This document shows positions 11,998 through 61,410 of a stretch of DNA of 64,000 nucleotides, piece by piece; the first letter of the stretch is position 1; each line of letters opens with the position of its first letter. This DNA is from Bispira polyomma (taxonomy: Eukaryota). The notes under the pieces are model-generated. The model had not been told where the DNA came from and did no database searches. It saw only the letters and a program-made list of their open reading frames with translations. Both the position numbers and the translations under genes were made by a program. The stretch is taken from the NCBI GenBank assembly GCA_965649765.1, contig OZ287756.1, forward strand, positions 55,056,001 through 55,120,000. Direction: 5' to 3'.

Positions 11998-12214
11998 TGC
12001 ATAGCACGACCCAATAGGGGTCTGCTACTTCAGTTCAACCAAAGGAAAATGTATTACTACTTTAAGCCCTAGGGGCAAATTCGACAACTGTAGCATGATT
12101 CATCCAACCGTGAACTGGCCAGCCAATTAGGGGTCTTCCCTCCCAAATTCTGCATTCCTGTCCTAATATCTTCCATTTTGGAAAAGGATTCAGCAGTATA
12201 CACACGTACATTTT
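11998..12214 (+). repeat. Ngaro split direct repeat A1 (217 bp)
   Basis: Matches 17837-18035 except for an 18-bp segment absent from A2. Confidence 0.95.
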
Positions 12215-12339
12215 ATACAGCCAAGTTTATGAAGGCTCTGCTGAATCCAATTGCTTTTAGTATTTTAGTTTTTTATTCTATTGTTTGTTTTTAATATACT
12301 CTACTTTTTATGTGTTTGTGATATATATATTGTGGTAAA

Positions 12340-13593
12340 ATGGGGAGGACGTCTGAAAGGAAATTAAGACACACTAAGAAGACCCCAGCTACTGAAGGCA
12401 GTAAGGCAACAAAGAAAGGTACAGCAAAGAAAAGCAAATTGGGTAAGAATACTCGTATTGATGACAGTATCATAACTAACTCCAGTAGCCTCTTTGATCA
12501 AGCTGAGGCCGACCACGTGTCTCCATCTACCCGATCTCGGCTTACGAACCCTACCGGATCATCACACCAGGCCAATGAAATGCTAACCATACTAAGGCGG
12601 CTTGAGGAATCTAACGCGCTACTCACCCATAGGTTGGATCGAGTAGAAGCTAGAGACTCGACTGCTCAGTCAGCATCTCCTTGCCTAAATCCCACACGTT
12701 CCGCTCACCAGGTCGCGTTGGGTAACGACATCACGGCTCAGCCACACCTCTCAGCTCCAGGTTCCATGACGAATCCTGGTCACTCGTATCCACAGGCACC
12801 GCTGTCGATCAGTACCACGGCTCAGCCACACACGTCAACAGCCAGTTCACTTAACCGGGTCGACTACACCACTGATGCAATCGTTCCCAAAGCAGACATC
12901 CTGAAGACGTTGCCAGACATACAGGCAAGGGTCAACGAGAGGCTAGCCGAGTACAACCTCCAGGCCCAGGCCGTATTTACCCAAGGTAAGGCTGCTCTCA
13001 GACAGAAGTCGGGGAGATTTAATACTACAGACATACCGAACAGCAACCCGAAGACTAGGTGGGCAAACGAGGGGTGGACGGGTACTTCTTCGCGTAAACG
13101 ACCACCTTATGATGACTTGTCGCTTCCTCAGTGGGCATCTGGCCAGTTGGCCAATGCTCTCCAGGTCACGGACCCTCTGGTCTCGAGAGAAATTATACAG
13201 CAGGTCGTTCTATCCCTCAGGGACGCCGCGTCACTACCATGGGAGGTCGTCCGAACGGCCTGGGCGTTAAACATGACCGAGATTGAAGAAGGTAGACTGT
13301 CCTGGGGGGACACAACGCAGTGGGCCCTCAACAGGCTCAGTGCGTCACAGCTAGCTATGGTGAATTCTAAAACCACCAATGCTTCATCTACTCACGTCGG
13401 ATCAACAGCCAAGGTTATTTGCAAACTGTATAACTCCGGAAAGTGTTCGCATAAAGCAGATCACAGCCAGTATAAGCATGTGTGTTGGCACTGTGCTACC
13501 GTGCTTCACAAAGACGTATACCACCCAGAATTTAAGTGTTATAAGTCCAACTCAGCTAAACAGGCAGAATCAGGCTCTTCTTCTACCCACTAG
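12340..13593 (+). CDS. gag: Ngaro Gag-like ORF1
   Basis: 417-aa ORF directly after A1, with a basic N-terminus and a C-terminal Cys/His knuckle CKLYNSGKC...HVCWHC...H...C typical of DIRS/Ngaro ORF1. Confidence 0.88.
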   Translation: MGRTSERKLRHTKKTPATEGSKATKKGTAKKSKLGKNTRIDDSIITNSSSLFDQAEADHVSPSTRSRLTNPTGSSHQANEMLTILRRLEESNALLTHRLDRVEARDSTAQSASPCLNPTRSAHQVALGNDITAQPHLSAPGSMTNPGHSYPQAPLSISTTAQPHTSTASSLNRVDYTTDAIVPKADILKTLPDIQARVNERLAEYNLQAQAVFTQGKAALRQKSGRFNTTDIPNSNPKTRWANEGWTGTSSRKRPPYDDLSLPQWASGQLANALQVTDPLVSREIIQQVVLSLRDAASLPWEVVRTAWALNMTEIEEGRLSWGDTTQWALNRLSASQLAMVNSKTTNASSTHVGSTAKVICKLYNSGKCSHKADHSQYKHVCWHCATVLHKDVYHPEFKCYKSNSAKQAESGSSSTH

Positions 13594-13713
13594 GACATTG
13601 ACCAACTACCAGGACTAGGGCCATCTTGTCATAACAGTGAAAGTAAGAATAAGTTAGAAGTATATGTAAAACAGAATTATGAAGACCAACACATAACTAA
13701 AGCAGATAAGCAT

Positions 13714-16641: not shown

Positions 16642-17639
16642 TTTCAGGATCAAACCACATCACACAAAGATTCACAGACTCAGCATGGCAGAGGATTGAC
16701 TGTGCTTTGCGTCCAAAGACTACACAGACTTACAATACCCAGTTTAGAACCTTCATCTCATTTACTTGCTATGCTGGAATAGAAGAAATTACCACACACT
16801 CATTGATTGCATTTCTAGAATACTTGGTACAAACAGGGGCGTCACCCAACATGGTTAATAACCATCTTGCAGCCATTAAACATATGGCCAAGAAGTTGTA
16901 CTGGGATACAAAAATTTTTGGAAACAATACAGTGTCTATGTTTACTAGAAGCTTGACACATACATCACCATTTAGACCTTCACCTAAAGGAATTTTCCAC
17001 ATTGAACACTTTTCAACACATTGATTACTGATCTCCAAAGCTTGTGATATTTTAAGAGACCCACCTCTATATAGGGCCATTTTCATGCTAGCTTTCTTTG
17101 GATTCTTGAGAATATCCAATATAGTCCCTCATTCCAGATCCAAATTTGATCCAACTCGTCACTTTCTAAGGAAAGATATAATCTTTGGCCACCCAGGTGC
17201 ACACTTGATCTTGAAGTGGGCAAAGAATTTACAAATTAGATCACAGTTTCACATTATACAGATACCCTTACTGGACAATGTTTTACTATGTCCAGTCAAG
17301 GCCATACAGACATTATTGAAATCTAGACCTCTGTCACCTGATGCCCCACTCTTCGTCAGTAGTACTTACCCACACTATCCAATTGTAGAAACACATGTGC
17401 GTTCTGCACTAGCTTCAATACTTACACATGTGGGAATTCCCACCAAATCACATAGTTTCCACACATTTAGAAGATCAGGGGCAACATATGCCTTTAATAA
17501 TAACGTGTCACTTCAAAACATCATGGCGCACGGCCTCTGGAGGTCATCTGCAGTCTGGTCATATTTGCATCAGAATTCTCAAGCAACTTCTGCTGTCCCT
17601 CTCACTTTCGCCTCCTCTCTACCTAAACTTCCTTCCTAG
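16638..17639 (+). pseudogene. Ngaro tyrosine recombinase with one in-frame TGA (17022-17024)
   Basis: ORFs 16638-17024 and 17085-17639 share a frame. Catalytic motifs GFLRISN (R), HTFRRSGA (HxxR), HGLWRS and WSYL (Y) are present. Confidence 0.93.
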
Positions 17640-17646
17640 TTTGGCT

Positions 17647-17836
17647 TGGGTGATTTTAAAATTGCCTTGTATTTTAATAATTTATACCTATTTTACACCT
17701 ACCTGTATATAGATTTACTAACATGTACAGAATTTAAATAAATTCCTCAAACCATAGTTTCACTGTCTTCTGCTATACTTACCAGACTATCTTTCCACTA
17801 CAACTTACCTTCTTTCCATTATACCAAGTAGAACTG
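17647..17836 (+). repeat. Ngaro split direct repeat B1 (190 bp)
   Basis: Matches 18712-18901 with one mismatch seen. Confidence 0.95.
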
Positions 17837-18035
17837 TGCATAGCACGACCCAATAGGGGTCTGCTACTTCAGTTCAACCAAAGGAAAATGTATTACTACT
17901 TTAAGCCCTAGGGGCATGATTCATCCAACCGTGAACTGGCCAGCCAATTAGGGGTCTTCCCTCCCAAATTCTGCATTCCTGTCCTAATATCTTCCATTTT
18001 GGAAAAGGATTCAGCAGTATACACACGTACATTTT
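17837..18035 (+). repeat. Ngaro split direct repeat A2 (199 bp)
   Basis: Copy of A1, directly abutting B1. Confidence 0.95.
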
Positions 18036-18711
18036 CCACCCACCTCCCCTTAACCACACCATAAGTTAATGTTCATTGTTCATTTCTTAGCTATGGCCAC
18101 TTTTGGTACTAAGCACATACTATGTTAAGAAGATCTCTGGTTGCGGACCCAAAAGGGCCCTGCTGAAAATCTTTGTAAGATAGGAAATCACTTAAATTTG
18201 GTTGGATTTGTGGGAGTTTTTGAACTCGGAACTGTGTGGTGTTAGGTCCTTCCTCATAACCTACCCTCTGGTGTGGGCTACCAGGGGGGCAATGCTCTGT
18301 GAGGTAGGACGTCTCACTGCTAAGCGAGTCGGTGCTGTAAGTTCCGGGTTCCCAAAAACTCCAATTAAGGCTGCTAGCGCAGGCATAATACGGCTTATAA
18401 GTCCGGATTAAATAGGAAATTTACTAGTTAACGATTAAATATTGGTATGATTTAAAATGTTGAATGTAATGTCATTGGGCATAATTGTATTGAATAGTAT
18501 TGGTATGATGTAATGTCATTTGGTATAATTGTATTGAATAGTGTTGGATCGACGTTGGCCTTAGGGGCTGATTGTTATAAAGGTGTACTGTTGTATGCTA
18601 GGCAAATGCTTAGTCTTCAGACGTTGGTTTTCCCAGCTTGCTGCTTAATGCTTGTGAGGTTTTATCCTCTGTATTATTTACTACCTTGCTTTTGCTTGTG
18701 TTGTCATGTAA

Positions 18712-18901
18712 TGGGTGATTTTAAAATTACCTTGTATTTTAATAATTTATACCTATTTTACACCTACCTGTATATAGATTTACTAACATGTACAGAATTT
18801 AAATAAATTCCTCAAACCATAGTTTCACTGTCTTCTGCTATACTTACCAGACTATCTTTCCACTACAACTTACCTTCTTTCCATTATACCAAGTAGAACT
18901 G
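18712..18901 (+). repeat. Ngaro split direct repeat B2 (190 bp)
   Basis: Copy of B1; it defines the 3' end of the element. Confidence 0.95.
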
Positions 18902-39396: not shown

Positions 39397-41936
39397 CCGT
39401 TTTCGACATAATTAGCGCACAGTGCCCTTAGAAAAACAAATTACCCCTATAAATGAGGTTTTAAGTGTTTCCTAATAACCACCCAGGCCCACAAAAAAAG
39501 CATTCTAATAACCGCCCAGGCCTACAAAAAAAGCATATCTCTCTCTTCACAGATGAAATGTCTGGAGACCCCATGTAGAAACATATCAGTGCCTGTATTG
39601 TGGTGATCCTACTCATCTACGTACAAAGTCTACAATGTCAAGTTACACCTCAACTAAGACAAAAAAAATGTGTAAATAATGTCACTACAGGATAAAAATA
39701 TTACATAATTATTCCCAAGTCAAAAAATAACTTGAACACGGATGAATTAAAAATGTAATATATCTTCAGCAATTGTTATTTAGTTTAAGGTTGATTCTTG
39801 GTTTTTAAAATATATAGCATATCTTTTGCAGGTGTGTTCACACTGGTAAATTTTACAATCTATCTGATAACAGAAAGCTCCGCAATGAAGTATTACTATT
39901 AAAATTTGCTGTAAAACCCAAAGTTATTGTAAAATTTATTTGGTAACTTTATTAACTCTCTTATTGTCAGTATGATGAATTCTCTTAGCTTCAAACTTTT
40001 ACAGTCTAAAACAAGAAATAAACTATGTACTTGGCGAATGAAACTTGAAACTAAATTTTGATCATTGTATCCACCGATCTGGTGGATACTTTGGTTAAGC
40101 GTTCGCTATGCTGCCGTCGCCACCGCTGTGCAACGAGTTTTTCGTTGCTAACAGTCAGCGGAAAACTAGACCAGCTAGCTTTACCAAATTTGCAGGATTT
40201 CTTCATTGGGAGGTAAGCTTCTCTGCAACTAAAATTAGCCTCATTCTGAAAAACAAGATGGCCACCATGGGCATTTCTTTGAAAATTGTCTACCTTTTTC
40301 TACTGGCTGGTTCTCGTAACTAGAAGGTTAAATCTTTTCATAGGTGATATGTATAACAGATATGTATGTCCTCTACAAGCATGCAGACATTTGACCTTGA
40401 TGCTCTTTATTCAAGGTCATCCATAAAGTGCCAAAGTACCCCACATAGCAGACTTTAAAAGTGCCTATATCTCCCTTATTATTGGTCCCAGAGGTTTGGC
40501 ATGTAAAGTCTACTTATAAAAAATCATAGACTAGGAATCTTCTGATGTGGTCAGGTTTGACCTTTGGCCCCCCTTTAAGGTCAAATGAGGATAACCGAAC
40601 TAAAAAGTGATTATAACTTGCTTATTATTGGTCCTACAGGTTTGTAATGTGAAACCAACTTACAGGTAATCATGGGCTGGGAATCTTCTGATGTGTTCAG
40701 ATTTGACCTCCTTGAAGGTCAGATGAGGGTAGCCAAACTTAAAGTGCTTATAACTTGCATATTATTGCTGCTACAGTTTTGACATGTAAAAGCAACCTAT
40801 AGGAGATCATTGGGCTGGGAGTCTTCTGATGTAGTCAGGTTTGACCTTGGGCCCCTCCTTGGAGGTCAAATAAGGGCAGCCAAATTTAAAAGTGTTTATA
40901 ACTCGCTTATTATTGGTCCTAGAGATTTGGAATGTTAAACCAACCTAAGGAAATCATGGTCGTAGAGGTTTTGGATGTGAAACAAACCTACGGGAAACAT
41001 GGGCTGCTAATCTTTTGGTCACATTTAACCTTGGATCCCTCGTGCAAGGTCAAACAGGTAGGCCAAACATTAAATTCCCTATCACAGATTTATTATTAAT
41101 CCCACAGGTTTGCAATGTCAAACTCACTTGTGCCATTTAAGGCTTTAGCATAAATGCCTTATAGGAAATCGTAGGCTTCTAGCTTGGGTGCTAACTAGAG
41201 TGCTTGCTACCGTGGGTGCTTTGTCTTTCTGGTGGATACATATACGCATCAGTTCTCCAATACACTAGGTCTAGTTTACTTTTTTACTGGATTTTAATGG
41301 CCATTTGCTGCAGTTAATGGCAGGACAGAAATAGTAATTTTGCTTGGGCTTGTTTTTCACACCATTGATCTAAATAATATATTTATTTAAATTTAACATT
41401 TTTGTTTAAATAATATATTAGAGATTATATTCTAATTACATTAATCATGCTAAATTTGCTAAACTCATTGGAAGTCATTATTGTCCACCAATGAGTGTGC
41501 ATACTGATTTTCCTAAATACAATATTGTTGAGCCTTAAATATCTTTGAACAAGGCTACTTTATCAGTCACTTTCTTTAGTATTCGAATTTATGACTAATT
41601 TCTAGCATTGTAAACCTGAGTGCAGGAAGACTGCATTAGTTAATATAACAAGTTTCCTTTCACAGGAACTAAAAGTCTTGATTGCAGTTATTCATTTGTA
41701 TTGGAAAATAACTTGAGTAATTGTATATAGTATTTATTGCAGTTACTTGCATAATAGTTTTATTTTAAAAATAGCAGTAGAATTATTTTTTTCTTCTTTC
41801 AAATTCTCATTTGAATTTTGCATAGGTACATGCTGATATAAGGCTGAAGTAATATCTCAAATAGCGAACCATACCAAACATAAAATTAGGGGATGTGTGG
41901 TAAATGGGGCATGTGCGGTAATTACGTCGAATACAG
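39397..41936. mobile_element. Non-autonomous Tc1/mariner-type element
   Basis: TA|CCGTTTTCGACATAATTAGCGCAC ... GTGCGGTAATTACGTCGAATACAG|TA: imperfect terminal inverted repeats of about 30 bp with a TA duplication. Confidence 0.75.
40065..41276 (+). mobile_element. HINE/pearl-like element with ~140-bp core tandem repeats
   Basis: 5' palindrome GTATCCACC-GATCT-GGTGGATAC, four to five core repeats (about 40450-41110), 3' subterminal GGTGGATACA, ending in CTAGTTT. Confidence 0.8.
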
Positions 41937-44556
41937 TAGTTCATAATACTATAAGTCATTCAGAATTTTCACCTGATACATGCATTTATTTTTTTAATGT
42001 ATAATTAGCATATAATTTATATAATATTTATATTCAGTCATGATATATACATACCCTTAGGCTTTTAAAGATAAAGACACCTACTTTATTAAAAACTGTG
42101 TTATAGGTAGAAGTCTCCATCCATAAATTGAATAATAAGTTCCCCACCAGGAAAAGTCCCTATTAGCTTAAATGAGGGTGAGGAAAAGTTCACATTAATT
42201 TTTTATTTTTTTATAGAGAACAATAATTAACAAATTTTTTTATAACATAAGAATGTAGAAAACATATTAGTCGGGCTAATCAAATTATTTGCAGGTTAAT
42301 CTTTTCCAAAATTACTGAAGGATCAGTCTGAAATTTTGCAAATGTATACCTTACCACATAGATAATAAAAATGGTTTATGGCATTTTGTTTAAATTTTTA
42401 ATTTGGATATTATTTTATTTATTTGTTTAAATTTAAGAAACATGAATAACTCTAATTTATTATTGCATTTTGACACTTTGAATGTATTATGAGCATATAG
42501 AAAAACAGGATCAGAAAAGCTAATGCACTGGTCAAATTTGACCTATGACCTTGAATTCAAGTAGTTTGTGTCTTGTCTTTAAGTGGTTACTTAAAACAAT
42601 GCCACCAAACTTTCTGGTATATTTTTTTAATGATCAGCAGCCTTTCTTGTAAGGGTTTTAAAGAAACGTATCTGTCAAGGTCCCTTTTCTGGCCCTAAAA
42701 AGGGCAATTTTTATGTTTTTGCTTTATATCTTATTAACAAGAGTTTTAAAACTTGGAATGAAATCAATGTATTGTGAGCCTATACGAAACCAGAGATTTG
42801 ACCTACGACCTTAGGATCAAGGTTAAGTTGCTTTCATGAAGGTCATCAATCAGAAGAAAACTGCTATGCCCGTTCAGGCATTCACATCTTGTTGTTCGTT
42901 TGCTTGAACAATTTTCAATTTCTGACTGCTACAGTGGTCACTACATTCTTGTTTAAATGGTGGTTCCACTATGCCGATTTCGTAGTAAACCTTGCCAATT
43001 TTACCATTTTGTCAGTTATTTTGCCATAGCAGTCCCGAGTTGATTATTTAATTAAAAGTACGATCGTCATAGACGTGATCACTTTATATAGTGATAGTAG
43101 ATTTTGCCTTAGCCTAGAGATATGAGACCGTTGAGCGGTCACTGAATGCTTGGTATTGTTTCAATGCCTGAGCAATATACAGGGTTTCGAAATCCACGTG
43201 TCGCACAACGTTTTAAAGCAATAAAATACCTTATATCGGCTTTATTTTATAACATTTTCTTCGATTGCAGATTCTGCCATTTTGTAAATAAAAAAAAACA
43301 AATATCGCACTCTGCGCAGCTTCCAAAATATTAAACTACGGTCGCTGTTTGTCTGCTACATTTTTATTGGTTCAAAATTGGGAAGTTGTTCTGTGACAAC
43401 CAATCAGCGCCTAGCTTTGTTCTAGCAATTTGCAAGCGCCACCTAGTGAGTGTGTGATTTGTTACCACATAAAACCAACATTGTATAATAAAAGCATTGT
43501 ATAATCTATTCAAACCCTAGCAACCAAAAAAGGGAAGATTTTTGGTTTTTGTATTACACATCAGATGCATATATCAGACAGCATATATGGTGTGGTCTGC
43601 TTTCAATATACTTTTTTAGGAATATAAGCCATTTTAATTTGATGGCTAAATATTGGCTAAATTGCTGATTTTTGTCCCCCATTTAAAATTATAATGCCTC
43701 ACTTTTTCAGTGACAGTGGAGGAGTGCCCCCACATTTGGAAATTCCTAAATGGACACTGTGAAGTGACATTGGCATATTTATTATAAATCTTATTTTGTT
43801 GAAGTATGAATTAATTTTAAAACCACGATTGATTTTTTAGTGTTGGTAAAAGCATGAAATGAGTTGAAAATATTGACCATATATTATTTTGCCACCAGAA
43901 ATTTATTATTTAAAAAAAAATGTGATCGGTAAAATACATAATACTTGAATTTGTCGTCTGATGTCATAATAGCTTGATTGTATTAAACAAGTACTCAGTG
44001 ACTGACAATCTACATGTGGCCCCATGGGCCACTCTTATCTTGTTTATGTTTTTGAGCCATTTATTTTATGAATGTAATATGAGTGTATTGGAAACAAAGA
44101 TTAGACAATGAAATGTACTGGCCATAGTTGGCCTATGTCCTCAGGTTTAAAGTCAAACATGGGTTACAAAGCTCAAATTTCAATATTTGTGTCTTGTCTT
44201 GACTGACATTTGATATGTCATTCTTGAAAGCAATAAGCATACAAGTGTTATTATGTAAACATTTTCTTTGACTGTCTACACTACTTATTACACTGTATAA
44301 TTTAAACTTGTCCACTGCTTTTGTATTGTTAGTTGCTGCGGTGATTATTATTGCTAAAGCTGTTGATGGATTAAAATTAGGTCTTTATACAATATACACT
44401 TACACAAGTCATTGGATAATGCAGAAAATGTACCTGAATTGACACTAATGAAGTAATTCTATAGCAGTTATTTTCGCCCCTAAAAAAATAGATTATTGTT
44501 ACGTTAGTCATTTGTGAATAACTATGGTGTATTGTTTTAAATGCATTTTTATAGAT

Positions 44557-44845
44557 TGTGATTATTTAAATCTAAGTTTATTCACTGAAAAATTCTGGAT
44601 GCATAATTTTAACTGGCTTTAAATATAACTAATTGTTTTATTACAGATATCCAAGATTACATACAGAGTTTTCTAAATTTGAATAAAATTGTGTATATGT
44701 TTTTAAAAGGTTATATGTACCTAACAAAGAATGTTTAAATTTATACTCTGTGGTCTATGAATGAGTATCAACCAAATAGTTGACACAGATATATTATTAC
44801 TCTGAGCTACTCTATAATCTAGAATGTAGTAAACATAATTGTCTG
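44557..44845 (+). other. Exon-less paralog of the ankyrin array unit
   Basis: Upstream and downstream intron sequence are joined at GTACC-TAA-CAAAG. The 277 bp equivalent to 52985-53261 (acceptor, exon, donor) are absent. Confidence 0.93.
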
Positions 44846-44991
44846 ATATACTTTTAGATGAACAATTATTAAATTTAAGGTTGTCATTAAATGGTTGGAC
44901 ATTAAATTTTGACTTATAACATGTACCAAAATGCATTTTGTTCAAGTTGTTATAATGATTGATATGACCTTGATATAGATTGGTAAACTTG

Positions 44992-45525
44992 TGTAAGGTA
45001 TAAATTCATAGGTAAGTGAGTACTGACCACTTATTTTTACTTGAAATAGTATTTAACCTGTAACTCACAGACTATTGGAAATAAGGTATATATGGGAAAT
45101 AAGTCTGTCAACAGTGTTCATAACTACAACATCTGATTAAGCTTTCTGTATGACTTTTAATCTGAACATGGGGGCACATTTCTAGGTAAAGACAAAGTTA
45201 TTAATGATCATTTCCAAGAAAAGTATTTGTGTAGGAGGACTAGCCTGTCTCTCTAGTAGAGTGTATGTTTTAGTGTTTTAGTATTTGTTAAATGTATAAC
45301 TTTATAATTTGTGAAAACTGTAGATGAGTCTTGATAAGGTTATTTTAAGAAAGTTGTCAGAGTAATTTCCTTTTGGTGAAGTATATAAATGGTTAGATTG
45401 AATTGTATAGCAGAGTTGCAATGTATACTTTCACAGAGATAGTGACCTGATAGAGTTGAGTTCTGAGTTCTACAAATAGAAGTACTGAGTTGAGTGAAGA
45501 AAGCTATGCCTTATAACCAGTTACA
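44992..45525 (+). mobile_element. Probable solo LTR
   Basis: TGTAA...TTACA ends, near-perfect 4-bp flanks CTTG/CTTA, and an internal TATATAAA at about 45382. Confidence 0.5.
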
Positions 45526-45975
45526 CTTATGAGTTTACAGTTCAGTTCTGATACATGGAATAGCTTTTAATGTTAAATGTTATAAACAATATACATGGAA
45601 AATGAAACAGTATCTTCTTAGTCAATCTGACTAGGCTACACCGCCCCAAAGCCTCAGCCACAACACAACACCCTCACAATAGTGTAGGAGTCTTGAAACA
45701 CAACATGTACTGAGAAACCATGTATCATGTCTCTAAATAAATGGCTAATGTATATATTCAAGATATATAGTTAAATTGAGAGAATCGGGAGGATTTTGAG
45801 TTTTCAATGTTAACACACCAGTGAGTATAGTTTTTCGCCAAGCAGAATTTTACTCAGGAGTCGGCAGTTATGCTTCCCCTGTGCATCTGATAAGTAAATG
45901 TAACACAAACTGCAGACTTTTTTGTTTTTAATGTTGGAGTAAGTTAGATATATCTTAGAATATAGATAAATATAG

Positions 45976-46782
45976 CCTAGAAATGGCGGGAGCTAATAGA
46001 TCTAAACATGTATAGATACATGACATTTAATAACATGTCCAAAACGCATGTAGGTACATGCCATACAGCAACTTGTCCAAAATTTATATAGGTACATCGC
46101 GATAGCAAGATGTCCAAAACAGCTATATGTACATGGCGAGAGCAACATGTCCAAAACACAAATAGGTACATGGCATACAACAACATGTCCAAAATTTATA
46201 TAGGTACATGGCATACATCAACATGTCCAATGCACATATAGGTACATGGTGAGAGCAACATGTTCAAAACAGATATTAGTACATGGCGAGAGCAACATGC
46301 CTAAAACACATAGTCGTACATGGCGAGACTAACATGTCCAAAACACATACAGTTGCATGTCGAGAGCAACATGTTCAAAGCACATATTGGTACATGGCAA
46401 GAGTAACATGTCCAAAACACATACAGGTGCATGTCGAGAGCAACATGTTCAAAGCACATATCAGTACATGGCGAGAGCAACATGTCTAAAACACATATAG
46501 GTACATAGTGAGAACAACATACCTAAAACACATATAGGTACATGGCGAGAGCAACAAGTCCAAACACTCAGGTACATTGCTTACAGCCACATGTACCAAA
46601 CACATATAGATACATGGTGAGTGCAATATGTACAAAAGACATAAAGCTACATGGCAAGAGCAACATGTACAAAATACATATAGGTACATGGCGAGAGCAA
46701 CATGTACAAAACACATATAGATACATGACATACAGCAACATGACTAAACACATATATCTACATGACGAGAGCAACATGACTA
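45976..46782 (+). repeat. 37-bp minisatellite array
   Basis: About 21 units of GTACATGGCGAGAGCAACATGTCCAAAACACATATAG. An inverted homolog lies at 60762-61409. Confidence 0.95.
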
Positions 46783-52000: not shown

Positions 52001-52990
52001 CACACATCAAATTATATCAAACAAATCAACTTATAGCTGTGGCTGCCTATTTAATTTCATTCATTAATTGGTTGACATGATTACCACCACTCAAGCCAGT
52101 TAAGCTACTTAATAACACATCCAGTTAGACAAAAAAATCAACATACAGCTGTGGCTTCCTATTTAATTTCAATTATGAAAGGATGAACATGGTTACTATG
52201 ACTAAATTCAGTTAAGCTATTTTATATGTAGTCCTTATAAACAAATCAAGTAATACATGGTTCCCATTGTATCAATGTATCATCAATTAAATCGATGGAA
52301 AGGCACAGTTAAAGGATAGGCTTACATCAATTTAGGCAGTTTTTAATAGAGATTTTCAATCAATCAAATGTAAATTCATCATCAAAACAAGCAATATATT
52401 TTAAGGAATAAGGTTATGAGCTTTCAATAGTGGATTTTAAACCTTAGTTATTATGAAAAAAAGCATAGTGAGAGGATAAGCTTACTTATTTGGGACAATT
52501 TAAATAAAGTATACATTATAAATGTCGGAAAACAGGCAATGACTAGAACATTTAATAATGAACTTTAAACCTGTCATTTCATTAAAAAAAATAACATAAA
52601 ATCATCATTGTGTGAATTAATTATTATTAAAACATTTACGATCTCTAGTTTTCAATTTTTATCCAATCTCAAGTTTGGCCAGTTTTCCTCAGACAATTCT
52701 GTGACAAGTGTGGATAAAACACATAGTTCATTTAATCCTTCAATACAAATAATATTAGGTGATATTTTGTAAGCATTTTCTCTGACTGTCTGCACTACTT
52801 ATACAATATCACAAACTGTGATTATTTAAATCTAAGTTTATTCACCGCAAAATTCTGTATGCATAATTTCATCTGGTTTTCAATATAAGTAATTGTTTTA
52901 TTACAGATATCCAAGATTACATACAGAGTTTTCTAAATTTGAATAAAATTGTGTATATGTTTTTAAAAGGTTATATGTACCTAATTACAG

Positions 52991-53257
52991 ATCATGCTTA
53001 TCATTAGTTCTTCACAGAGCTGTCAGCTGTGCACTGAAGTCCACAGTGGAGACGTTACTCTCAATTCCTGGAGTGGATGTTAATGTTAAAGATCAGGAGG
53101 GTAGAACACCCCTGATGGTGATTGGTATGAGCGTGGTGGATTGGGTTGACATGGGAGACCTTGATGACCTTGATCACAATTTATGTGGTATAATTAGACT
53201 GTTACTTGAACACCAGGCTGACATGAATGTAAAAGACAATACAGGAACCGGTGTCAG
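52991..53257 (+). CDS. Ankyrin array exon 1 (267 nt, loop type A: SVVDWVDMGDLDDLDHNL)
   Basis: TTACAG|A acceptor, CAG|GTAACA donor, phase 2-2, open frame SCLSLVLHRAVS...GRTPL...QADMNVKDNTG. Confidence 0.88.
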
Positions 53258-53806
53258 GTAACAAAGAATGTTTTACTTTATACTCTGTGGTTTATCAATG
53301 AGTATCAACCAAATAGTTGACACAGATATATTATGCCAGCTCTGAGCTACTTTATACTCTAGAATGTAGTAAACATAATTGTCTGTTCGAGCAGCTATAT
53401 TACTTATACCTTATACTTAACATATAATATTGTCTAATGTCCCTAACATAATGCAATTTAAAAATGAAGTGAATTGTTTGAAACACAAAATAATGTAAAC
53501 CTAGCCGGAATGTAGCACTTGTCTCAAAAAAAATCTTAAATTTGTTACGTACGTATGATAATTAGTTAGATACAGACATTAAAATATCACATAACAGGTA
53601 AATGTTAATGCTATTAATACAATATCACAAACTGTGATTATTTAAATCTAAGTTTATTCACCGCAAAATTCTGTATGCATAATTTCATCTGGTTTTCAAT
53701 ATAAGTAATTGTTTTATTACAGATATCCAAGATTACATACAGAGTTTTCTAAATTTGAATAAAATTGTGTATATGTTTTTAAAAGGTTATATGTACCTAA
53801 TTACAG

Positions 53807-53903
53807 ATCATGCTTATCATTAGTTCTTCACAGAGCTGTCAGCTGTGCACTGAAGTCCACAGTGGAGACGTTACTCTCAATTCCTGGAGTGGATGTTAAC
53901 GTT
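53807..53903 (+). pseudogene. Partial array exon (5' third, no donor)
   Basis: 190-bp duplication that runs into intron sequence and a stop (VLLQIFKITYRVF*). Confidence 0.85.
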
Positions 53904-53996
53904 TTATTACAGATATTCAAGATTACATACAGAGTTTTCTAAATTTGAATAAAATTGTGTATATGTTTTTAAAAGGTTATATGTACCTAATTACAG

Positions 53997-54093
53997 ATCA
54001 TGCTTATCATTAGTTCTTCACAGAGCTGTCAGCTGTGCACTGAAGTCCACAGTGGAGACGTTACTCTCAATTCCTGGAGTGGATGTTAACGTT
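53997..54093 (+). pseudogene. Partial array exon (5' third, no donor)
   Basis: Second 190-bp duplication with the same breakpoint. Confidence 0.85.
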
Positions 54094-54186
54094 TTATTAC
54101 AGATATTCAAGATTACATACAGAGTTTTCTAAATTTGAATAAAATTGTGTATATGTTTTTAAAAGGTTATATGTACCTAATTACAG

Positions 54187-54480
54187 ATCATGCTTATCAT
54201 TAGTTCTTCACAGAGCTGTCAGCTGTGCACTGAAGTCCACAGTGGAGACGTTACTCTCAATTGCTGGAGTGGATGTTAACGTTAAAGATCAGGAGGGTAG
54301 AACACCCCTGATGGTGATTGGTATGAGTGTGGAGGATTGGATTCACAGGGGAGACCTTGATGACCTTGATGACCTTGATGACTTTAATGACCTTGATCAC
54401 AATTTATGTGGTATAATTAGACTGTTACTTGAACACCAGGCTGACATGAATGTAAAAGACAATACAGGAACCGGTGTCAG
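54187..54480 (+). CDS. Ankyrin array exon 2 (294 nt, loop type B: SVEDWIHRGDLDDLDDLDDFNDLDHNL)
   Basis: Same splice sites, open frame. Confidence 0.85.
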
Positions 54481-55030
54481 GTAACAAAGAATGTTTTAAT
54501 TTATACTCTGTGGTTTATCAATGAGTATCAACCAAATAGTTGACACAGATATATTATGCCAGCTCTGAGCTACTTTATACTCTAGAATGTAGTAAACATA
54601 ATTGTCTGTTCGAGCAGCTATATTACTTATACCTTATACTTAACATATAATATTGTCTAATGTCCCTAACATAATGCAATTTAAAAATGAAGTGAATTGT
54701 TTGAAACACAAAATAATGTAAACCTAGCCGGAATGTAGCACTTGTCTCAAAAAAAAATCTTAAATTTGTTACGTACGTATGATAATTAGTTAGATACAGA
54801 CATTAAAATATCACATAACAGGTAAATGTTAATGCTATTAATACAATATCACAAACTGTGATTATTTAAATCTAAGTTTATTCACCGCAAAATTCTTTAT
54901 GCATAATTTCATCTGGTTTTCAATATAAGTAATTGTTTTATTACAGATATCCAAGATTACATACAGAGTTTTCTAAATTTGAATAAAATTGTGTATATGT
55001 TTTTAAAAGGTTATATGTACCTAATTACAG

Positions 55031-55127
55031 ATCATGCTTATCATTAGTTCTTCACAGAGCTGTCAGCTGTGCACCTAAGTTCACAGTGGAGACGTTACTC
55101 TCAATTACTGGAGTGGATGTTAACGTT
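55031..55127 (+). pseudogene. Partial array exon (5' third, no donor)
   Basis: Third 190-bp duplication, carrying the private changes CCT AAG TTC. Confidence 0.85.
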
Positions 55128-55220
55128 TTATTACAGATATTCAAGATTACATACAGAGTTTTCTAAATTTGAATAAAATTGTGTATATGTTTTTAAAAGG
55201 TTATATGTACCTAATTACAG

Positions 55221-55505
55221 ATCATGCTTATCATTAGTTCTTCACAGAGCTGTCAGCTGTGCACTGAAGTCCACAGTGGAGACGTTACTCTCAATTGCTG
55301 GAGTGGATGTTAACGTTAAAGATCAGGAGGGTAGAACACCCCTGATGGTGATTGGTATGAGTGTGGAGGATTGGATTCACAGGGGAGACCTTGATGACCT
55401 TGATGTCTTTGATAACCTTGATCACAATTTATGTGGTATAATTAGACTGTTACTTGAACACCAGGCTGACATGAATGTAAAACACAATACAGGAACCGGT
55501 GTCAG
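55221..55505 (+). CDS. Ankyrin array exon 3 (285 nt, loop type B: SVEDWIHRGDLDDLDVFDNLDHNL)
   Basis: Same splice sites, open frame. Confidence 0.85.
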
Positions 55506-56054
55506 GTAACAAAGAATGTTTTAATTTATACTCTGTGGTTTATCAATGAGTATCAACCAAATAGTTGACACAGATATATTATGCCAGCTCTGAGCTACTT
55601 TATACTCTAGAATGTAGTAAACATAATTGTCTGTTCGAGCAGCTATATTACTTATACCTTATACTTAACATATAATATTGTCTAATGTCCCTAACATAAT
55701 GCAATTTAAAAATGAAGTGAATTGTTTGAAACACAAAATAATGTAAACCTAGCCGGAATATAGCACTTGTCTCAAAAAAAATCTTAAATTTGTTACGTAC
55801 GTATGATAATTAGTTAGATACAGACATTAAAATATCACATAACAGGTAAATGTTAATGCTATTAATACAATATCACAAACTGTGATTATTTAAATCTAAG
55901 TTTATTCACCGAAAAATTCTGTATGCATAATTTCATCTGGTTTTGAATATAAGTAATTGTTTTATTACAGATATCCAAGATTACATACAGAGTTTTCTAA
56001 ATTTGAATAAAATTGTGTATATGTTTTTAAAAGGTTATATGTACCTAATTACAG

Positions 56055-56312
56055 ATCATGCTTATCATTAGTTCTTCACAGAGCTGTCAGCTGTGCACTG
56101 AAGTCCACAGTGGAGACGTTACTCTCAATTACTGGAGTGGATGTTAACGTTAAAGATCAGAAGGGTAGAACACCGCTGATGGTGATTGGTATGAGTGTGA
56201 AGGATTGGCCTGACTGGAGAAGCTTTGATGACAGTTTGTGTGGTACAATTAGACTGTTACTTGAACACCAGGCTGACATGAATGTAAAAGACAATACAGG
56301 AACCGGTGTCAG
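56055..56312 (+). CDS. Ankyrin array exon 4 (258 nt, loop type C: SVKDWPDWRSFDDSL)
   Basis: Same splice sites, open frame. Confidence 0.88.
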
Positions 56313-56861
56313 GTAACAAAGAATGTTTTAATTTATACTCTGTGGTTTATCAATGAGTATCAACCAAATAGTTGACACAGATATATTATGCCAGCTCTGA
56401 GCTACTTTATACTCTAGAATGTAGTAAACATAATTGTCTGTTCGAGCAGCTATATTACTTATACCTTATACTTAACATATAATATTGTCTAATGTCCCTA
56501 ACATAATGCAATTTAAAAATGAAGTGAATTGTTTGAAACACAAAATAATGTAAACCTAGCCGGAATGTAGCACTTGTCTCAAAAAAAATCTTAAATTTGT
56601 TACGTACGTATGATAATTAGTTAGATACAGACATTAAAATATCACATAACAGGTAAATGTTAATGCTATTAATACAATATCACAAACTGTGATTATTTAA
56701 ATCTAAGTTTATTCACCGCAAAATTCTGTATGCATAATTTCATCTGGTTTTCAATATAAGTAATTGTTTTATTACAGATATCCAAGATTACATACAGAGT
56801 TTTCTAAATTTGAATAAAATTGTGTATATGCTTTTAAAAGGTTATATGTACCTAATTACAG

Positions 56862-57119
56862 ATCATGCTTATCATTAGTTCTTCACAGAGCTGTCAGCTC
56901 TGCACTGAAGTCCACAGTGGAGACGTTACTCTCAATTACTGGAGTGGATGTTAACGTTAAAGATCAGAAGGGTAGAACACCGCTGATGGTGATTGGTATG
57001 GGTGAGAAGGTTTGGCCTTACTGGAGAAGCTTTGATGACAGTTTGTGTGGTACAATTAGACTGTTACTTGAACACCAGGCTGACATGAATGTAAAAGACA
57101 ATACAGGAACCGGTGTCAG
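56862..57119 (+). CDS. Ankyrin array exon 5 (258 nt, loop type C: GEKVWPYWRSFDDSL)
   Basis: Same splice sites, open frame. Confidence 0.88.
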
Positions 57120-57668
57120 GTAACAAAGAATGTTTTAATTTATACTCTGTGGTTTATCAATGAGTATCAACCAAATAGTTGACACAGATATATTATGCCA
57201 GCTCTGAGCTACTTTATACTCTAGAATGTAGTAAACATAATTGTCTGTTCGAGCAGCTATATTACTTATACCTTATACTTAACATATAATATTGTCTAAT
57301 GTCCCTAACATAATGCAATTTAAAAATGAAGTGAATTGTTTGAAACACAAAATAATGTAAACCTAGCCGGAATGTAGCACTTGTCTCAAAAAAAATCTTA
57401 AATTTTTTACGTACGTATGATAATTAGTTAGATACAGACATTAAAATATCACATAACAGGTAAATGTTAATGCTATTAATACAATATCACAAACTGTGAT
57501 TATTTAAATCTAAGTTTATTCACCGAAAAATTCTGTATGCATAATTTCATCTGGTTTTGAATATAAGTAATTGTTTTATTACAGATATCCAAGATTACAT
57601 ACAGAGTTTTCTAAATTTGAATAAAATTGTGTATATGTTTTTAAAAGGTTATATGTACCTAATTACAG

Positions 57669-57935
57669 ATCATGCTTATCATTAGTTCTTCACAGAGCTG
57701 TCAGCTGTGCACTGAAGTCCACAGTGGAGACGTTACTCTCAATTACTGGAGTGGATGTTAATGTTAAAGATCAGGAGGGTAGAACACCCCTGATGGTGAT
57801 TGGTATGAGCGTGGTGGATTGGGTTGACATGGGAGACCTTGATGACCTTGATCACAATTTATGTGGTATAATTAGACTGTTACTTGAACACCAGGCTGAC
57901 ATGAATGTAAAACACAATACAGGAACCGGTGTCAG
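57669..57935 (+). CDS. Ankyrin array exon 6 (267 nt, loop type A)
   Basis: Same splice sites, open frame. Confidence 0.88.
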
Positions 57936-58484
57936 GTAACAAAGAATGTTTTACTTTATACTCTGTGGTTTATCAATGAGTATCAACCAAATAGTTGACA
58001 CAGATATATTATGCCAGCTCTGAGCTACTTTATACTCTAGAATGTAGTAAACATAATTGTCTGTTCGAGCAGCTATATTACTTATACCTTATACTTAACA
58101 TATAATATTGTCTAATGTCCCTAACATAATGCAATTTAAAAATGAAGTGAATTGTTTGAAACACAAAATAATGTAAACCTAGCCGGAATGTAGCACTTGT
58201 CTCAAAAAAAATCTTAAATTTGTTACGTACGTATGATAATTAGTTAGATACAGACATTAAAATATCACATAACAGGTAAATGTTAATGCTATTAATACAA
58301 TATCACAAACTGTGATTATTTAAATCTAAGTTTATTCACCGCAAAATTCTGTATGCATAATTTCATCTGGTTTTCAATATAAGTAATTGTTTTATTACAG
58401 ATATCCAAGATTACATACAGAGTTTTCTAAATTTGAATAAAATTGTGTATATGCTTTTAAAAGGTTATATGTACCTAATTACAG

Positions 58485-58742
58485 ATCATGCTTATCATTA
58501 GTTCTTCACAGAGCTGTCAGCTCTGCACTGAAGTCCACAGTGGAGACGTTACTCTCAATTACTGGAGTGGATGTTAACGTTAAAGATCAGAAGGGTAGAA
58601 CACCGCTGATGGTGATTGGTATGAGTGTGAAGGATTGGCCTTACTGGAGAAGCTTTGATGACAGTTTGTGTGGTACAATTAGACTGTTACTTGAACACCA
58701 GGCTGACATGAATGTAAAAGACAATACAGGAACCGGTGTCAG
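58485..58742 (+). CDS. Ankyrin array exon 7 (258 nt, loop type C: SVKDWPYWRSFDDSL)
   Basis: Same splice sites, open frame. Confidence 0.88.
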
Positions 58743-59291
58743 GTAACAAAGAATGTTTTAATTTATACTCTGTGGTTTATCAATGAGTATCAACCAAATA
58801 GTTGACACAGATATATTATGCCAGCTCTGAGCTACTTTATACTCTAGAATGTAGTAAACATAATTGTCTGTTCGAGCAGCTATATTACTTATACCTTATA
58901 CTTAACATATAATATTGTCTAATGTCCCTAACATAATGCAATTTAAAAATGAAGTGAATTGTTTGAAACACAAAATAATGTAAACCTAGCCGGAATGTAG
59001 CACTTGTCTCAAAAAAAATCTTAAATTTGTTACGTACGTATGATAATTAGTTAGATACAGACATTAAAATATCACATAACAGGTAAATGTTAATGCTATT
59101 AATACAATATCACAAACTGTGATTATTTAAATCTAAGTTTATTCACCGAAAAATTCTGTATGCATAATTTCATCTGGTTTTGAATATAAGTAATTGTTTT
59201 ATTACAGATATCCAAGATTACATACAGAGTTTTCTAAATTTGAATAAAATTGTGTATATGTTTTTAAAAGGTTATATGTACCTAATTACAG

Positions 59292-59558
59292 ATCATGCTT
59301 ATCATTAGTTCTTCACAGAGCTGTCAGCTGTGCACTGAAGTCCACAGTGGAGACGTTACTCTCAATTACTGGAGTGGATGTTAATGTTAAAGATCAGGAG
59401 GGTAGAACACCCCTGATGGTGATTGGTATGAGCGTGGTGGATTGGGTTGACATGGGAGACCTTGATGACCTTGATCACAATTTATGTGGTATAATTAGAC
59501 TGTTACTTGAACACCAGGCTGACATGAATGTAAAACACAATACAGGAACCGGTGTCAG
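59292..59558 (+). CDS. Ankyrin array exon 8 (267 nt, loop type A)
   Basis: Same splice sites, open frame; appears identical to exon 6. Confidence 0.88.
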
Positions 59559-59796
59559 GTAACAAAGAATGTTTTAATTTATACTCTGTGGTTTATCAAT
59601 GAGTATCAACCAAATAGTTGACACAGATATATTATGCCAGCTCTGAGCTACTTTATACTCTAGAATGTAGTAAACATAATTGTCTGTTCGAGCAGCTATA
59701 TTACTTATACCTTATAGTTAACATATAATATTGTCTAATGTCCCTAACATAATGCAATTTAAAAATGAAGTGAATTGTTTGAAACACAAAATAATG

Positions 59797-60490
59797 GCTA
59801 AACAGCTTAATGGATTTATATCCCAAGAAGGTATTGCGAATGTTACCCAATCTGCATACCGGAGATCCCACTCCACAGAGACCGCTCTACTCAAGATTCT
59901 AAATGATATAGCTATGTCTGTTGACATGGGAAAGGCAGTGCCCCTTACATTACTGGACCTCTCTGCAGATTTTGACATCAACAATCACTCCATTTTATAT
60001 GACTGTTTAACAGACTGGTTTGGAATTGATGGGACTGTATTGCTTTGGATCAAATCCTACCTCCTAGACTGTAAACAAAAAATCAAAATTGGTAGCAGTT
60101 TTTTCCTGAGGTCTTTTTGCTGCCCTTCGGTGTTCTCCAAGGTTCTGTCCTAGGTCCTCTGCTTTTTACCCTGTACACTACCCCCCTCAGTCAAGTCATT
60201 TCAAAGTTTAATTTTACCCATCACCTGTATGCTGATGACACACATATATACCTAGCACTGGACTCCAGGAACTTTGACTCAAGTATTGCCGAGCTCACTG
60301 ACTAAAATTAGTCCAGGAGTGGATGGATTGTGCAAAATTAAAGCTCAACCCAGATAAAACGGATTTCATTATTATAGGTAACAAACCCACCACAGAGTCA
60401 CTTACAGCAAAATTTGCTATTTCATTCCTCCAAAACAATATCACTCCGTCAGCAGAGGTAAAAAACCTGGGTGTCATCTTTGACTTGGAC
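59797..60490 (+). pseudogene. Internal RT fragment of an L2-like LINE, frameshifted
   Basis: [40 protein letters not shown] and LKLNPDKT are spread across three frames. Confidence 0.93.
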
Positions 60491-60761: not shown

Positions 60762-61409
60762 TAGTCATGTTGCTCTCATCATGTAGATGTATGTGTTTTA
60801 GACATGTTGCTGTATATCATGTGTCTATGTGTGTTTTGTACATGTTGCACTCACTATGTATCTATATGTGTTGGGTACATGTGGCTGTAAGTAATGTACC
60901 TGAGTGTTTGGACTTGTTGCTCTTGCCATGTAGCTATATGTGTTTTAGACATGTTGCTCTCGCCATGTACTGATACGTGCTTCGAACATGTTGCTCTCAA
61001 CATGCACCTGTTTGTGTTTTGGACATGTTAATCTTGCCATGTACGTATATGTGTTTTAGGCATGTTGCTCTCGCCATGTACCAATATCTGTTATGGACAT
61101 GTTGCTTTCGCCATGTACCAATATCTATTTTGGACATGTTGCTCTCGCCATGTACCAATATCTGTTATGGACATGTTGCTCTCGCCATGTACCAATATCT
61201 GTTATGGACATGTTGCTCTCGCCATGTACCAATATCTGTTATGGACATGTTGCTCTCGCCATGTACCAATATCTGTTATGGACATGTTGCTCTCGCCATG
61301 TACCAATATCTGTTTTGGACATGTTGCTCTCGCCATGTACCAATATCTGTTTTGAACATGTTGCTCTCACCATGTACCAATATCTGTTTTGAACATGTTG
61401 CTCTCACCA
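60762..61409 (-). repeat. 37-bp minisatellite array, inverted relative to 45976-46782
   Basis: Period 37 (for example 61141 and 61178), with recently homogenised units at 61060-61409; interrupted by the L2 tail. Confidence 0.95.
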
Positions 61410-61410
61410 T

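What the first reader, a model, noticed from the sequence alone, without database searches (positions are those of the whole stretch)
44557..44845. Empty cassette: a paralogous unit lacking exactly the exon and its splice sites
Array units read GTACC-TAA-ttacag[exon]g-TAA-CAAAG, whereas this copy reads GTACC-TAA-CAAAG. The missing 277 bp are the 267-nt exon plus 10 nt of splice signals, bounded by a TAA microhomology, with both introns retained. The simplest reading is microhomology-mediated deletion, but the precision is striking. One alternative is cassette-like gain or loss of the exon at TAA. Another is an RNA-templated event: the junction links the branch-point-like CTAA to the downstream donor region, resembling the by-product of exon back-splicing, although an exact branch cDNA would be expected to keep GTAA.
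Basis: partly seen in the sequence, partly recalled or inferred. Interest (0 to 1): 0.75.

Follow-up and report, generated by a model that had tools for sequence, protein, structure and literature searches.

The report
Ankyrin exon unit with exon deleted
This is a leftover copy of one ankyrin-repeat exon module that lost its exon through an ordinary small deletion between two TAA triplets, so it is a relic and not a sign of a special exon-cutting mechanism.

Summary
Window 44557-44724 matches the intron upstream of the array's ankyrin exons (95%). Window 44722-44845 matches the intron downstream (91%). The two parts meet at one TAA. Missing are ttacag, the 267-nt exon, g and one TAA, 277 bp in all.

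The plain deletion reading is the best supported.
- The copy is a DNA-level paralogue of a single filled unit, F0 (C9:54803394-54803953). Its flanks are collinear with window 44215-45187.
- The array and F0 both carry the exon, so the exon was lost here, not gained.
- The same copy has a second deletion of about 552 bp at an ATA microhomology, 44848-50.
- The array's 190-bp internal duplications join at GTT.
- Other breakpoints in the family lie in mid-exon or mid-intron.

The junction is one event. It occurs twice at 100% identity, but only inside a later duplication of at least 15 kb. None of the other 9 module flank pairs I tested is empty.

A branch cDNA would keep GTAA, and the CTAAT adenosine lies only 7 nt from the acceptor. 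No RNA runs were available, and no listed contig bridges the junction.

Interest is low.

The parts
44215..44556 (+). Upstream flank of the empty locus. It is collinear with the flank upstream of the filled single unit F0 (C9:54802903-54803181), with a 62-bp indel at 44450-44511.
   Evidence: 84-98% identity
44557..44724 (+). i3: the last 168 bp of the intron upstream of the ankyrin exon, ending 6 nt short of the acceptor. 44630-44724 is identical to the array consensus.
   Evidence: (95.2%)
44722..44724 (+). TAA. This is the one retained copy of the 3-nt direct repeat that flanks the missing 277 bp, i.e. the deletion junction.
44725..44847 (+). i5: the start of the intron downstream of the exon, from position +5 after the donor GTAA.
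   Evidence: (91.3%)
44848..44850 (+). ATA. This is the junction of a second deletion of about 552 bp. The lost segment is retained in F0 (about C9:54803953-54804505) and in the inverted copy R.
44848..45187 (+). Downstream flank. It is collinear with F0 54804491-54804850, and is also present inverted just beyond the window (C9:55122213-55122741).
43400..44045 (.). Young high-copy transposable-element copy close to the left edge of the locus (its matches end at 44045; F0 homology starts at 44215). The first look gave 1543 candidates, of which 40 were scored; most were 94-98% identical.
45190..45720 (.). Older dispersed repeat bounding the locus on the right (dozens of copies, 73-83% identical).
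52795..59803 (+). The filled relatives: a tandem array of 8 complete units (exons of 258-294 nt, all multiples of 3, no stops) plus 3 partial 190-bp duplicates.

Best explanation
The stretch is a dead module in a long, transposon-rich interval of a large + strand ankyrin-repeat gene region. An older local duplication produced three related loci: a single filled unit (F0), the unit that later amplified into the 8-exon array, and this copy (E). In E, a DNA-level deletion between two TAA triplets removed 268-277 bp. One triplet lies 6 nt before the acceptor and the other is inside the donor GTAA. The deletion came from end joining or replication slippage at a 3-nt microhomology. The closeness of both ends to the exon borders is best read as coincidence. 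TAA is very common here (about 30 per kb) and is part of both splice-signal sequences. Clean in-frame removal of a symmetric exon also does no harm. E later lost a further 552 bp or so at an ATA microhomology. After that, a duplication of at least 15 kb (or an uncollapsed haplotype) copied it. Shown: homology, collinearity, both junctions, the copy number and the lack of other empty units. Inferred: the repair pathway, neutrality and the order of events.
For: (1) Both halves match the unit, and the junction has one TAA where filled units have two. (2) E is collinear with the single filled unit F0 beyond the unit on both sides (44215-45187 = C9:54802903-54804850). (3) Polarity: E is 93% identical to the array units and 88-90% to F0, and array to F0 is 88-89%. 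Both relatives hold the exon, and about 41%-identical exons of the same kind lie elsewhere in the region. Loss in E is therefore the parsimonious reading. (4) A second deletion in the same copy has ATA microhomology, and the lost segment is kept in F0 and in the inverted copy R. (5) The 190-bp internal duplications of the array join exon position +100 to intron position -90 at GTT. Three junctions with at least 3 nt of microhomology are unlikely by chance: 0.065 each and about 3e-4 together, by my formula with the window's base composition. (6) Other breakpoints are not at exon borders: the start of the array at -190, its end at +246, the end of R at about +166, and an inverted intron fragment covering +153 to +369. 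(7) It is a single event. The 289 bp occur twice in the genome at 100% identity, both inside one block aligned at 97.8% over 15,161 columns. The 13-mer junction occurs 49 times genome-wide against 130 for the reversed control, and only those 2 occurrences lie in this family. (8) In a flank-pair test over the 184 kb held, with 10 exon modules, only E and its duplicate are empty.
Against: Both deletion ends fall within 10 nt of the exon borders, which is improbable a priori. My rough estimate is 1e-3 or less for a random deletion that covers the exon. This is an inference, and the case was selected after the fact. The 95 bp left of the junction show no difference from the array, while the neighbouring 73 bp show 8. 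That hints that conversion or constraint acted right next to the junction, which a plain deletion does not explain. The junction was not seen bridged in independent contigs. The bin 44734-44814 has depth 24 in X1 and 0 in X2 and X3, although the tool says a hole proves nothing. No related species and no RNA data could be examined.
Confidence: 0.85

Rival explanations
1. Repair-coupled deletion. A break in or near E's exon was repaired by copying from the array, and the repair was resolved at the TAA microhomology. This left an array-identical tract next to the junction and deleted the exon. It is a variant of the DNA-level deletion with a templated step.
For: 44630-44724 (95 bp) has 0 differences from the array consensus, whereas 44557-44629 has 8 and 44725-44845 has 7 substitutions plus a 3-bp indel. 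The locus shows many microhomology junctions.
Against: The identical tract may equally reflect ordinary gene conversion at another time, or constraint on a conserved element. F0 is diverged in the same tract, so the ancestral state cannot be fixed. Nothing ties the tract to the deletion in time.
Confidence: 0.12
2. RNA-templated loss. A cDNA made across the 2'-5' branch of a back-splicing by-product, or of an intron lariat of the array, recombined with the gene and removed the exon together with the stretch between branch point and acceptor.
For: The left end of the junction is the only YTNAY motif (CTAAT) in the last 60 nt of the intron, and the right end is in the donor. Reverse transcriptase makes mismatches and micro-insertions or deletions at branches (passages of PMC4315302). 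Retrocopies of circular RNAs exist (passages of PMC4897178).
Against: An exact branch copy would read CCTAA+GTAACAAAG, whereas E lacks 4 nt of it. The candidate branch adenosine is 7 nt from the acceptor, while 90% of human branch points lie 19-37 nt upstream (human data, not this organism). There is only one event and no recurrence. A second, clearly non-splicing microhomology deletion lies about 120 bp away. No RNA data exist here. None of the 8 papers listed describes such a product; I saw the listing only.
Confidence: 0.03
3. Cassette gain. The empty copy is the ancestral site, and the exon with its splice signals was inserted at TAA, with the TAA acting as a target-site duplication.
For: A 274-bp segment flanked by a 3-nt direct repeat formally resembles an insertion with a target-site duplication.
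Against: The segment ends share 5 of 20 positions as inverted repeats, which is chance level. It encodes in-frame ankyrin repeats (Pfam Ank, 32.2 bits against a cut-off of 21.1). Exon-bearing relatives lie on both sides of E in similarity, and much older exons of the same kind exist.
Confidence: 0.01
4. Assembly artefact. The junction does not exist in the organism.
For: No listed contig of the 3 public runs bridges 44724, and depth just right of the junction is low or nil.
Against: Two separately assembled copies carry the identical junction. Their flanks differ by 2.2%, so they are not the same reads placed twice. The E-specific left part is present without a difference in all 3 runs. The hole is expected from the short words shared with the array, and the tool says a hole proves nothing.
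Confidence: 0.03

Closest known systems
Microhomology-mediated deletion (alternative end joining or replication slippage) in duplicated gene segments
   Same: There is a short direct repeat at both ends of the lost segment with one copy retained, and no filler. Several such junctions (TAA, ATA, GTT) occur in one locus, which is rich in tandem and inverted duplications.
   Different: Both ends happen to fall within 10 nt of the exon borders, so the result looks like a clean removal of the cassette.
Exon loss or pseudo-exon relics in tandem exon-duplication genes (repeat-protein genes built of symmetric one-module exons)
   Same: The exon is symmetric, with a length that is a multiple of 3, in an ankyrin gene where modules are gained by duplication. 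Loss of one module leaves the reading frame intact.
   Different: Here the exon is physically deleted while about 170 and 120 bp of its own introns survive. It was not inactivated by splice-site mutation.
circRNA-derived pseudogenes (PMC4897178, passages read)
   Same: Both concern a possible genomic footprint of back-splicing.
   Different: Those carry a non-colinear exon-exon junction and lie at dispersed sites. This copy has no exon at all, is collinear with its relatives and lies in the parent locus.
RT-mediated intron loss (recalled from general knowledge, not from a call)
   Same: It is a precise removal of a splicing-defined segment from genomic DNA.
   Different: Intron loss removes introns exactly and keeps exons. 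Here the exon is removed, the introns stay, and the ends are 6 and 4 nt off the splice sites.

Membership tests
Microhomology-mediated deletion scar | A filled homologue shows that the two flanks are separated by a segment absent here, with no extra letters at the junction | tested here: met
   flanks abut at 44724/44725; 8 array units and F0 are filled
Microhomology-mediated deletion scar | A short direct repeat at both ends of the lost segment, with one copy retained | tested here: met
   TAA...TAA in array units and in F0, a single TAA in E
Microhomology-mediated deletion scar | Polarity: absence is derived, not ancestral | tested here: met
   E is nested between exon-bearing relatives by identity, and older exons of the family exist. 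This is parsimony; no outgroup species was available.
Microhomology-mediated deletion scar | The repair pathway itself (end joining versus slippage) | not testable with these tools
   The sequence alone cannot tell them apart.
Branch (lariat or back-splice by-product) cDNA footprint | The junction joins the branch adenosine directly to intron position +1 (G of GT) | tested here: not met
   E reads CCTAA|CAAAG. GTAA is missing.
Branch (lariat or back-splice by-product) cDNA footprint | The adenosine is a usable branch point | tested here: inconclusive
   It is the only YTNAY in the last 60 nt, but 7 nt from the acceptor. Human branch points lie mostly at 19-37 nt. There are no data for this organism.
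Branch (lariat or back-splice by-product) cDNA footprint | The RNA species exists (back-splice or lariat reads) | not testable with these tools
   No RNA run holds the stretch.
circRNA-derived pseudogene | Non-colinear exon-exon junction | tested here: not met
   There is no exon sequence in E. The definition comes from PMC4897178.
Transposon-like insertion with target-site duplication | Terminal inverted repeats or other transposon ends on the segment between the TAA repeats | tested here: not met
   5 of 20 terminal positions match when inverted. The segment is an in-frame ankyrin exon.
Ankyrin-repeat exon family (for the filled relatives) | Pfam Ank match above the curated cut-off | tested here: met
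   Array exon 32.2 bits and F0 29.5 bits against a cut-off of 21.1

The most novel reading that the evidence does not exclude
The exon was removed through an RNA intermediate. A cDNA read across the 2'-5' branch that links the CTAAT adenosine 7 nt before the acceptor to the downstream donor, with a 4-nt slip at the branch, converted the genomic copy. That would be a DNA footprint of exon back-splicing and a route for clean loss of modules in repeat-protein genes.
Probability: 0.03. Interest if true: 0.8.

Novelty: new member of a known kind. Interest (0 to 1): 0.15.

Why it matters
It matters little in itself. It is a well-documented example of how a module of a repeat-protein gene can be lost cleanly by an ordinary microhomology deletion. 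It also shows that this ankyrin locus is being reshaped by many small microhomology events: duplications, deletions and inverted copies. Its main value is negative. The apparent precision at the splice sites does not call for a new mechanism, so the neighbouring array should not be read as a cassette insertion and excision system on this evidence.

Tried and rejected
Genome-wide recurrence of the junction. The 13-mer GTACCTAACAAAG occurs 49 times against 130 for the reversed control, and only the 2 copies on C9 belong to the family. The 289-bp search found the family only on C9.

Other empty units. The flank-pair test used 10 exon modules over the 184 kb I held (window, 40 kb downstream, and the 80 kb of the duplicate). 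It found only E and its duplicate.

Reads. There was one study with 3 runs, kept as contigs only, and none on record as RNA. Laying them showed E's left part and array-type loose ends (TTACAGATC...) behind 44724. Those loose ends come from the filled array units, which share 44635-44724 with E, so they are not evidence for a filled allele. A 934-nt contig of sample S2 enters at 44844 from unlike sequence. I first took it for a possible alternative allele. It is explained by the inverted partial copy R just beyond the window, which is 98-99% identical over 44844-45088 and is preceded there by the 552-bp segment. I could not read that contig's letters, so this assignment is an inference.

Transposon reading of the TAA repeat: rejected.

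Related species: none can be reached with these tools, because the genome search holds bacteria and archaea only.

Papers. Searches were seen as listings. I read passages of PMC4897178 and PMC4315302. No supplement was opened. I make no claim that a branch-derived genomic deletion is absent from print. I only say that none of the 8 papers listed describes one.

Whether the 271-kb-distant duplicate is a true paralogue or an uncollapsed haplotype was not resolved.

Full report
WHAT IS THERE. The window is AT-rich eukaryotic DNA with no N and lies at C9:55056001-55120000 of a 1.035-Gb assembly. At 52795-59803 there is a tandem array of units of roughly 810-1,220 bp. Each unit holds one exon that encodes ankyrin repeats. 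Pfam Ank scores 32.2 bits against a cut-off of 21.1. There are 8 complete exons of 258, 267, 285 or 294 nt. All lengths are multiples of 3 and none has a stop. There are also 3 partial copies, made by a 190-bp internal tandem duplication.

The reported stretch lies 8 kb upstream of the array. BLAST of one unit against the window gives 44557-44724 = the last 168 bp of the upstream intron (95.2%) and 44722-44845 = the start of the downstream intron (91.3%). Read directly, filled units are ...GTACC TAA ttacag [exon] g TAA CAAAG..., and the copy is ...GTACC TAA CAAAG.... 277 bp are missing relative to a unit with a 267-nt exon, and they are bounded by a 3-nt repeat.

WHAT IT IS RELATED TO. A search of the whole assembly with the 289 bp found the family only on contig C9 (23 matches). 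Besides the array there is a second full-length empty copy, 100% identical, at C9:54829164-54829452. There is also one filled single unit, which I call F0, at C9:54803394-54803953 with a 258-nt exon that is 85% identical in protein to the array exon.

The second empty copy sits in a block that aligns with window 31661-46778 at 97.8% over 15,161 columns. It carries the same flanking transposon copy. The junction was therefore copied by a later large duplication, or the block is an uncollapsed haplotype. Either way the two copies are not independent events.

F0 is the informative relative, because its flanks are collinear with those of the empty copy well beyond the unit:
- 54802903-54803181 = window 44215-44557
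- 54803394-54803559 = window 44549-44724
- 54803825-54803973 = window 44722-44872
- 54804491-54804850 = window 44834-45187

The empty copy (E) is thus a DNA-level paralogue of a single-unit locus about 970 bp long. On the left it lies close to a young high-copy transposable element (43400-44045; 1543 candidates in the first look, 40 scored). On the right it is bounded by an older dispersed repeat starting at 45190.

POLARITY. In the two intron pieces E is about 93% identical to the array units and 88-90% to F0, while the array and F0 are 88-89% identical. Both relatives have the exon. Exons of the same kind at about 41% protein identity lie further along the same strand. Loss in E is the parsimonious reading. 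The segment between the two TAAs has no transposon-like ends: 5 of 20 terminal positions match as inverted repeats.

THE LOCUS IS FULL OF MICROHOMOLOGY JUNCTIONS THAT IGNORE EXON BORDERS.
(i) E has a second deletion. Where E reads GTCTGAT ATA CTTTTAG (ATA at 44848-44850), F0 reads GTCTGAT ATA TGTTCG...about 552 bp...TGTAAC ATA CTTATAG. An inverted partial copy (R) just beyond the window, at C9:55121172-55123284, also keeps this segment.
(ii) The 190-bp duplications join exon position +100 to intron position -90 at a shared GTT.
(iii) The array starts about 190 bp before the first acceptor and stops 246 bp after the last donor.
(iv) R ends about 166 bp after the donor position of F0 and has no exon.
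(v) An inverted 218-bp fragment of the inter-exon intron lies at C9:55127568-55127785.
(vi) There are further indels between F0, E and the array upstream of i3.

Only the two ends of the exon deletion lie within 10 nt of an exon border. With the window's base composition, a random junction shows at least 3 nt of microhomology with probability about 0.065. Three junctions out of three gives about 3e-4 (my formula). Microhomology-driven repair or slippage therefore appears to be the process at work here.

RECURRENCE. The junction 13-mer is no more frequent in the genome than its reversed control (49 against 130), and only the two C9 copies are family members. I also ran a flank-pair test. I took 400 bp on each side of 10 exon-bearing modules and searched them against the 184 kb I held. 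Adjacent flanks without an exon appeared only at E and its duplicate (gap 15 bp, against 263-341 bp for filled units with a complete exon). The other four-unit array downstream (exon-bearing reading frames starting at window-extended 84786, 90758, 96009 and 102478) is filled throughout. The rest of the gene region could not be fetched.

THE RNA READING. Passages of PMC4315302 say that reverse transcriptase makes mismatches, micro-insertions or deletions at the branch, and that 90% of human branch points lie 19-37 nt upstream of the acceptor. In these units the only YTNAY motif in the last 60 nt of the intron is the CTAAT at the junction, but its adenosine is 7 nt from the acceptor. An exact branch copy would read CCTAA+GTAACAAAG, and E lacks 4 of these letters.

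Collinearity of the flanks does not by itself exclude conversion by a cDNA. What speaks against it is the inexact junction, the unusual branch distance, the single occurrence, and the second deletion of the same microhomology type about 120 bp away, which cannot be related to splicing. CircRNA-derived pseudogenes are defined by a non-colinear exon-exon junction (passages of PMC4897178), so they are a different thing, since E has no exon. No RNA run was available, so back-splicing of these exons is untested.

READS. Three runs from one study and two samples, kept as contigs, hold 73-83% of the sampled words. Laid on 43600-46000, they gave the following results.
- A 455-nt contig covers 44205-44659 without a difference in all three runs, so E's left half exists in other data.
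- Contigs that reach 44724 continue with TTACAGATC..., which is the filled array form. It shares 44635-44724 with E, so this is not a filled allele of E.
- The bin 44734-44814 has depth 24 in X1 and none in X2 or X3, and no listed piece bridges the junction.
- The tool warns that holes prove nothing. Words shared with the array should break the graph here, which is my inference.
- A 934-nt contig of sample S2 that enters at 44844 from unlike sequence fits the inverted copy R.

The junction is thus supported by two assembled copies with diverged flanks, but not yet by independent reads.

MECHANISM AND VERDICT. The most likely history is as follows. An old local duplication gave F0, E and the founder of the array. 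E then lost its exon by a TAA-to-TAA microhomology deletion and later lost another 552 bp at ATA. Transposons then came to lie beside the locus, and a block of at least 15 kb was duplicated with it. The steps shown are the homologies, the junctions and the copy numbers. The order of events, the repair pathway and the neutrality of the loss are inferred.

The nearness of both ends to the splice sites is best taken as coincidence. TAA occurs about 30 times per kb and is part of both the donor (GTAA) and the AT-rich acceptor region. Removal of a whole symmetric exon together with its splice sites is harmless. This case was also picked out after the fact.

One thing is left unexplained. The 95 bp just left of the junction (44630-44724) have no difference from the array consensus, while the adjoining 73 bp have 8. 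This may be gene conversion, constraint on an element proposed by another note of the scan, or a trace of templated repair. I give the last of these about 12%.

Overall this is an ordinary deletion relic. Confidence in that reading is 0.85 and interest is low.

Noticed in passing
window 44630-44724 versus the array units: The 95 bp directly upstream of the junction are identical to the array consensus, while the adjoining 73 bp have 8 differences and the 121 bp downstream have 7 substitutions plus an indel. F0 is diverged in this tract, with a 10-bp gap and several substitutions. This points to gene conversion or constraint. The tract starts close to the left end of the 190-bp duplication unit, at a second acceptor-like TTTTATTACAG.
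   Followed up: partly
window 44848-46778 and window 60766-61410 plus C9:55121172-55123284 (beyond the window): The array lies between large inverted repeats. On the left are the flank, a dispersed repeat and a 37-bp minisatellite. On the right are the same minisatellite inverted and, 4 kb further on, the repeat and flank inverted (88-99% identical), including a 190-bp internal duplication.
   Followed up: partly
window 11998-18901 and C9:54809369-54816277: A 6.9-kb element that is 99% identical sits at different positions in the two duplicated blocks. In the duplicate it interrupts the equivalent of window 31660/31661. This looks like a recent transposon insertion.
   Followed up: no
C9:54791168-54805717 versus window 28363-28576: The duplicate block holds 14.5 kb, including the filled unit F0, that are absent at the corresponding place of the window. 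This is a large presence/absence difference between the two blocks. It fits either a deletion or uncollapsed haplotypes.
   Followed up: no
window-extended 84786-102804 (C9:55140786-55158804): This is a second array of four ankyrin-like exon modules spaced 5.2-6.5 kb apart, with 98-100% identical flanks. The exons are about 41% identical to those of the small array and have no Pfam match at E<=0.01 (2 of the 4 tested).
   Followed up: partly
C9:55127568-55127785 (minus strand): An inverted 218-bp fragment of the array's inter-exon intron, 91% identical, lies 8 kb beyond the end of the array.
   Followed up: no
window 53711-54283 and 54935-55317: The 190-bp tandem duplications create partial exons (acceptor plus 100 nt, not a multiple of 3) inside units 2 and 3. 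If these were spliced in, they would shift the reading frame.
   Followed up: no
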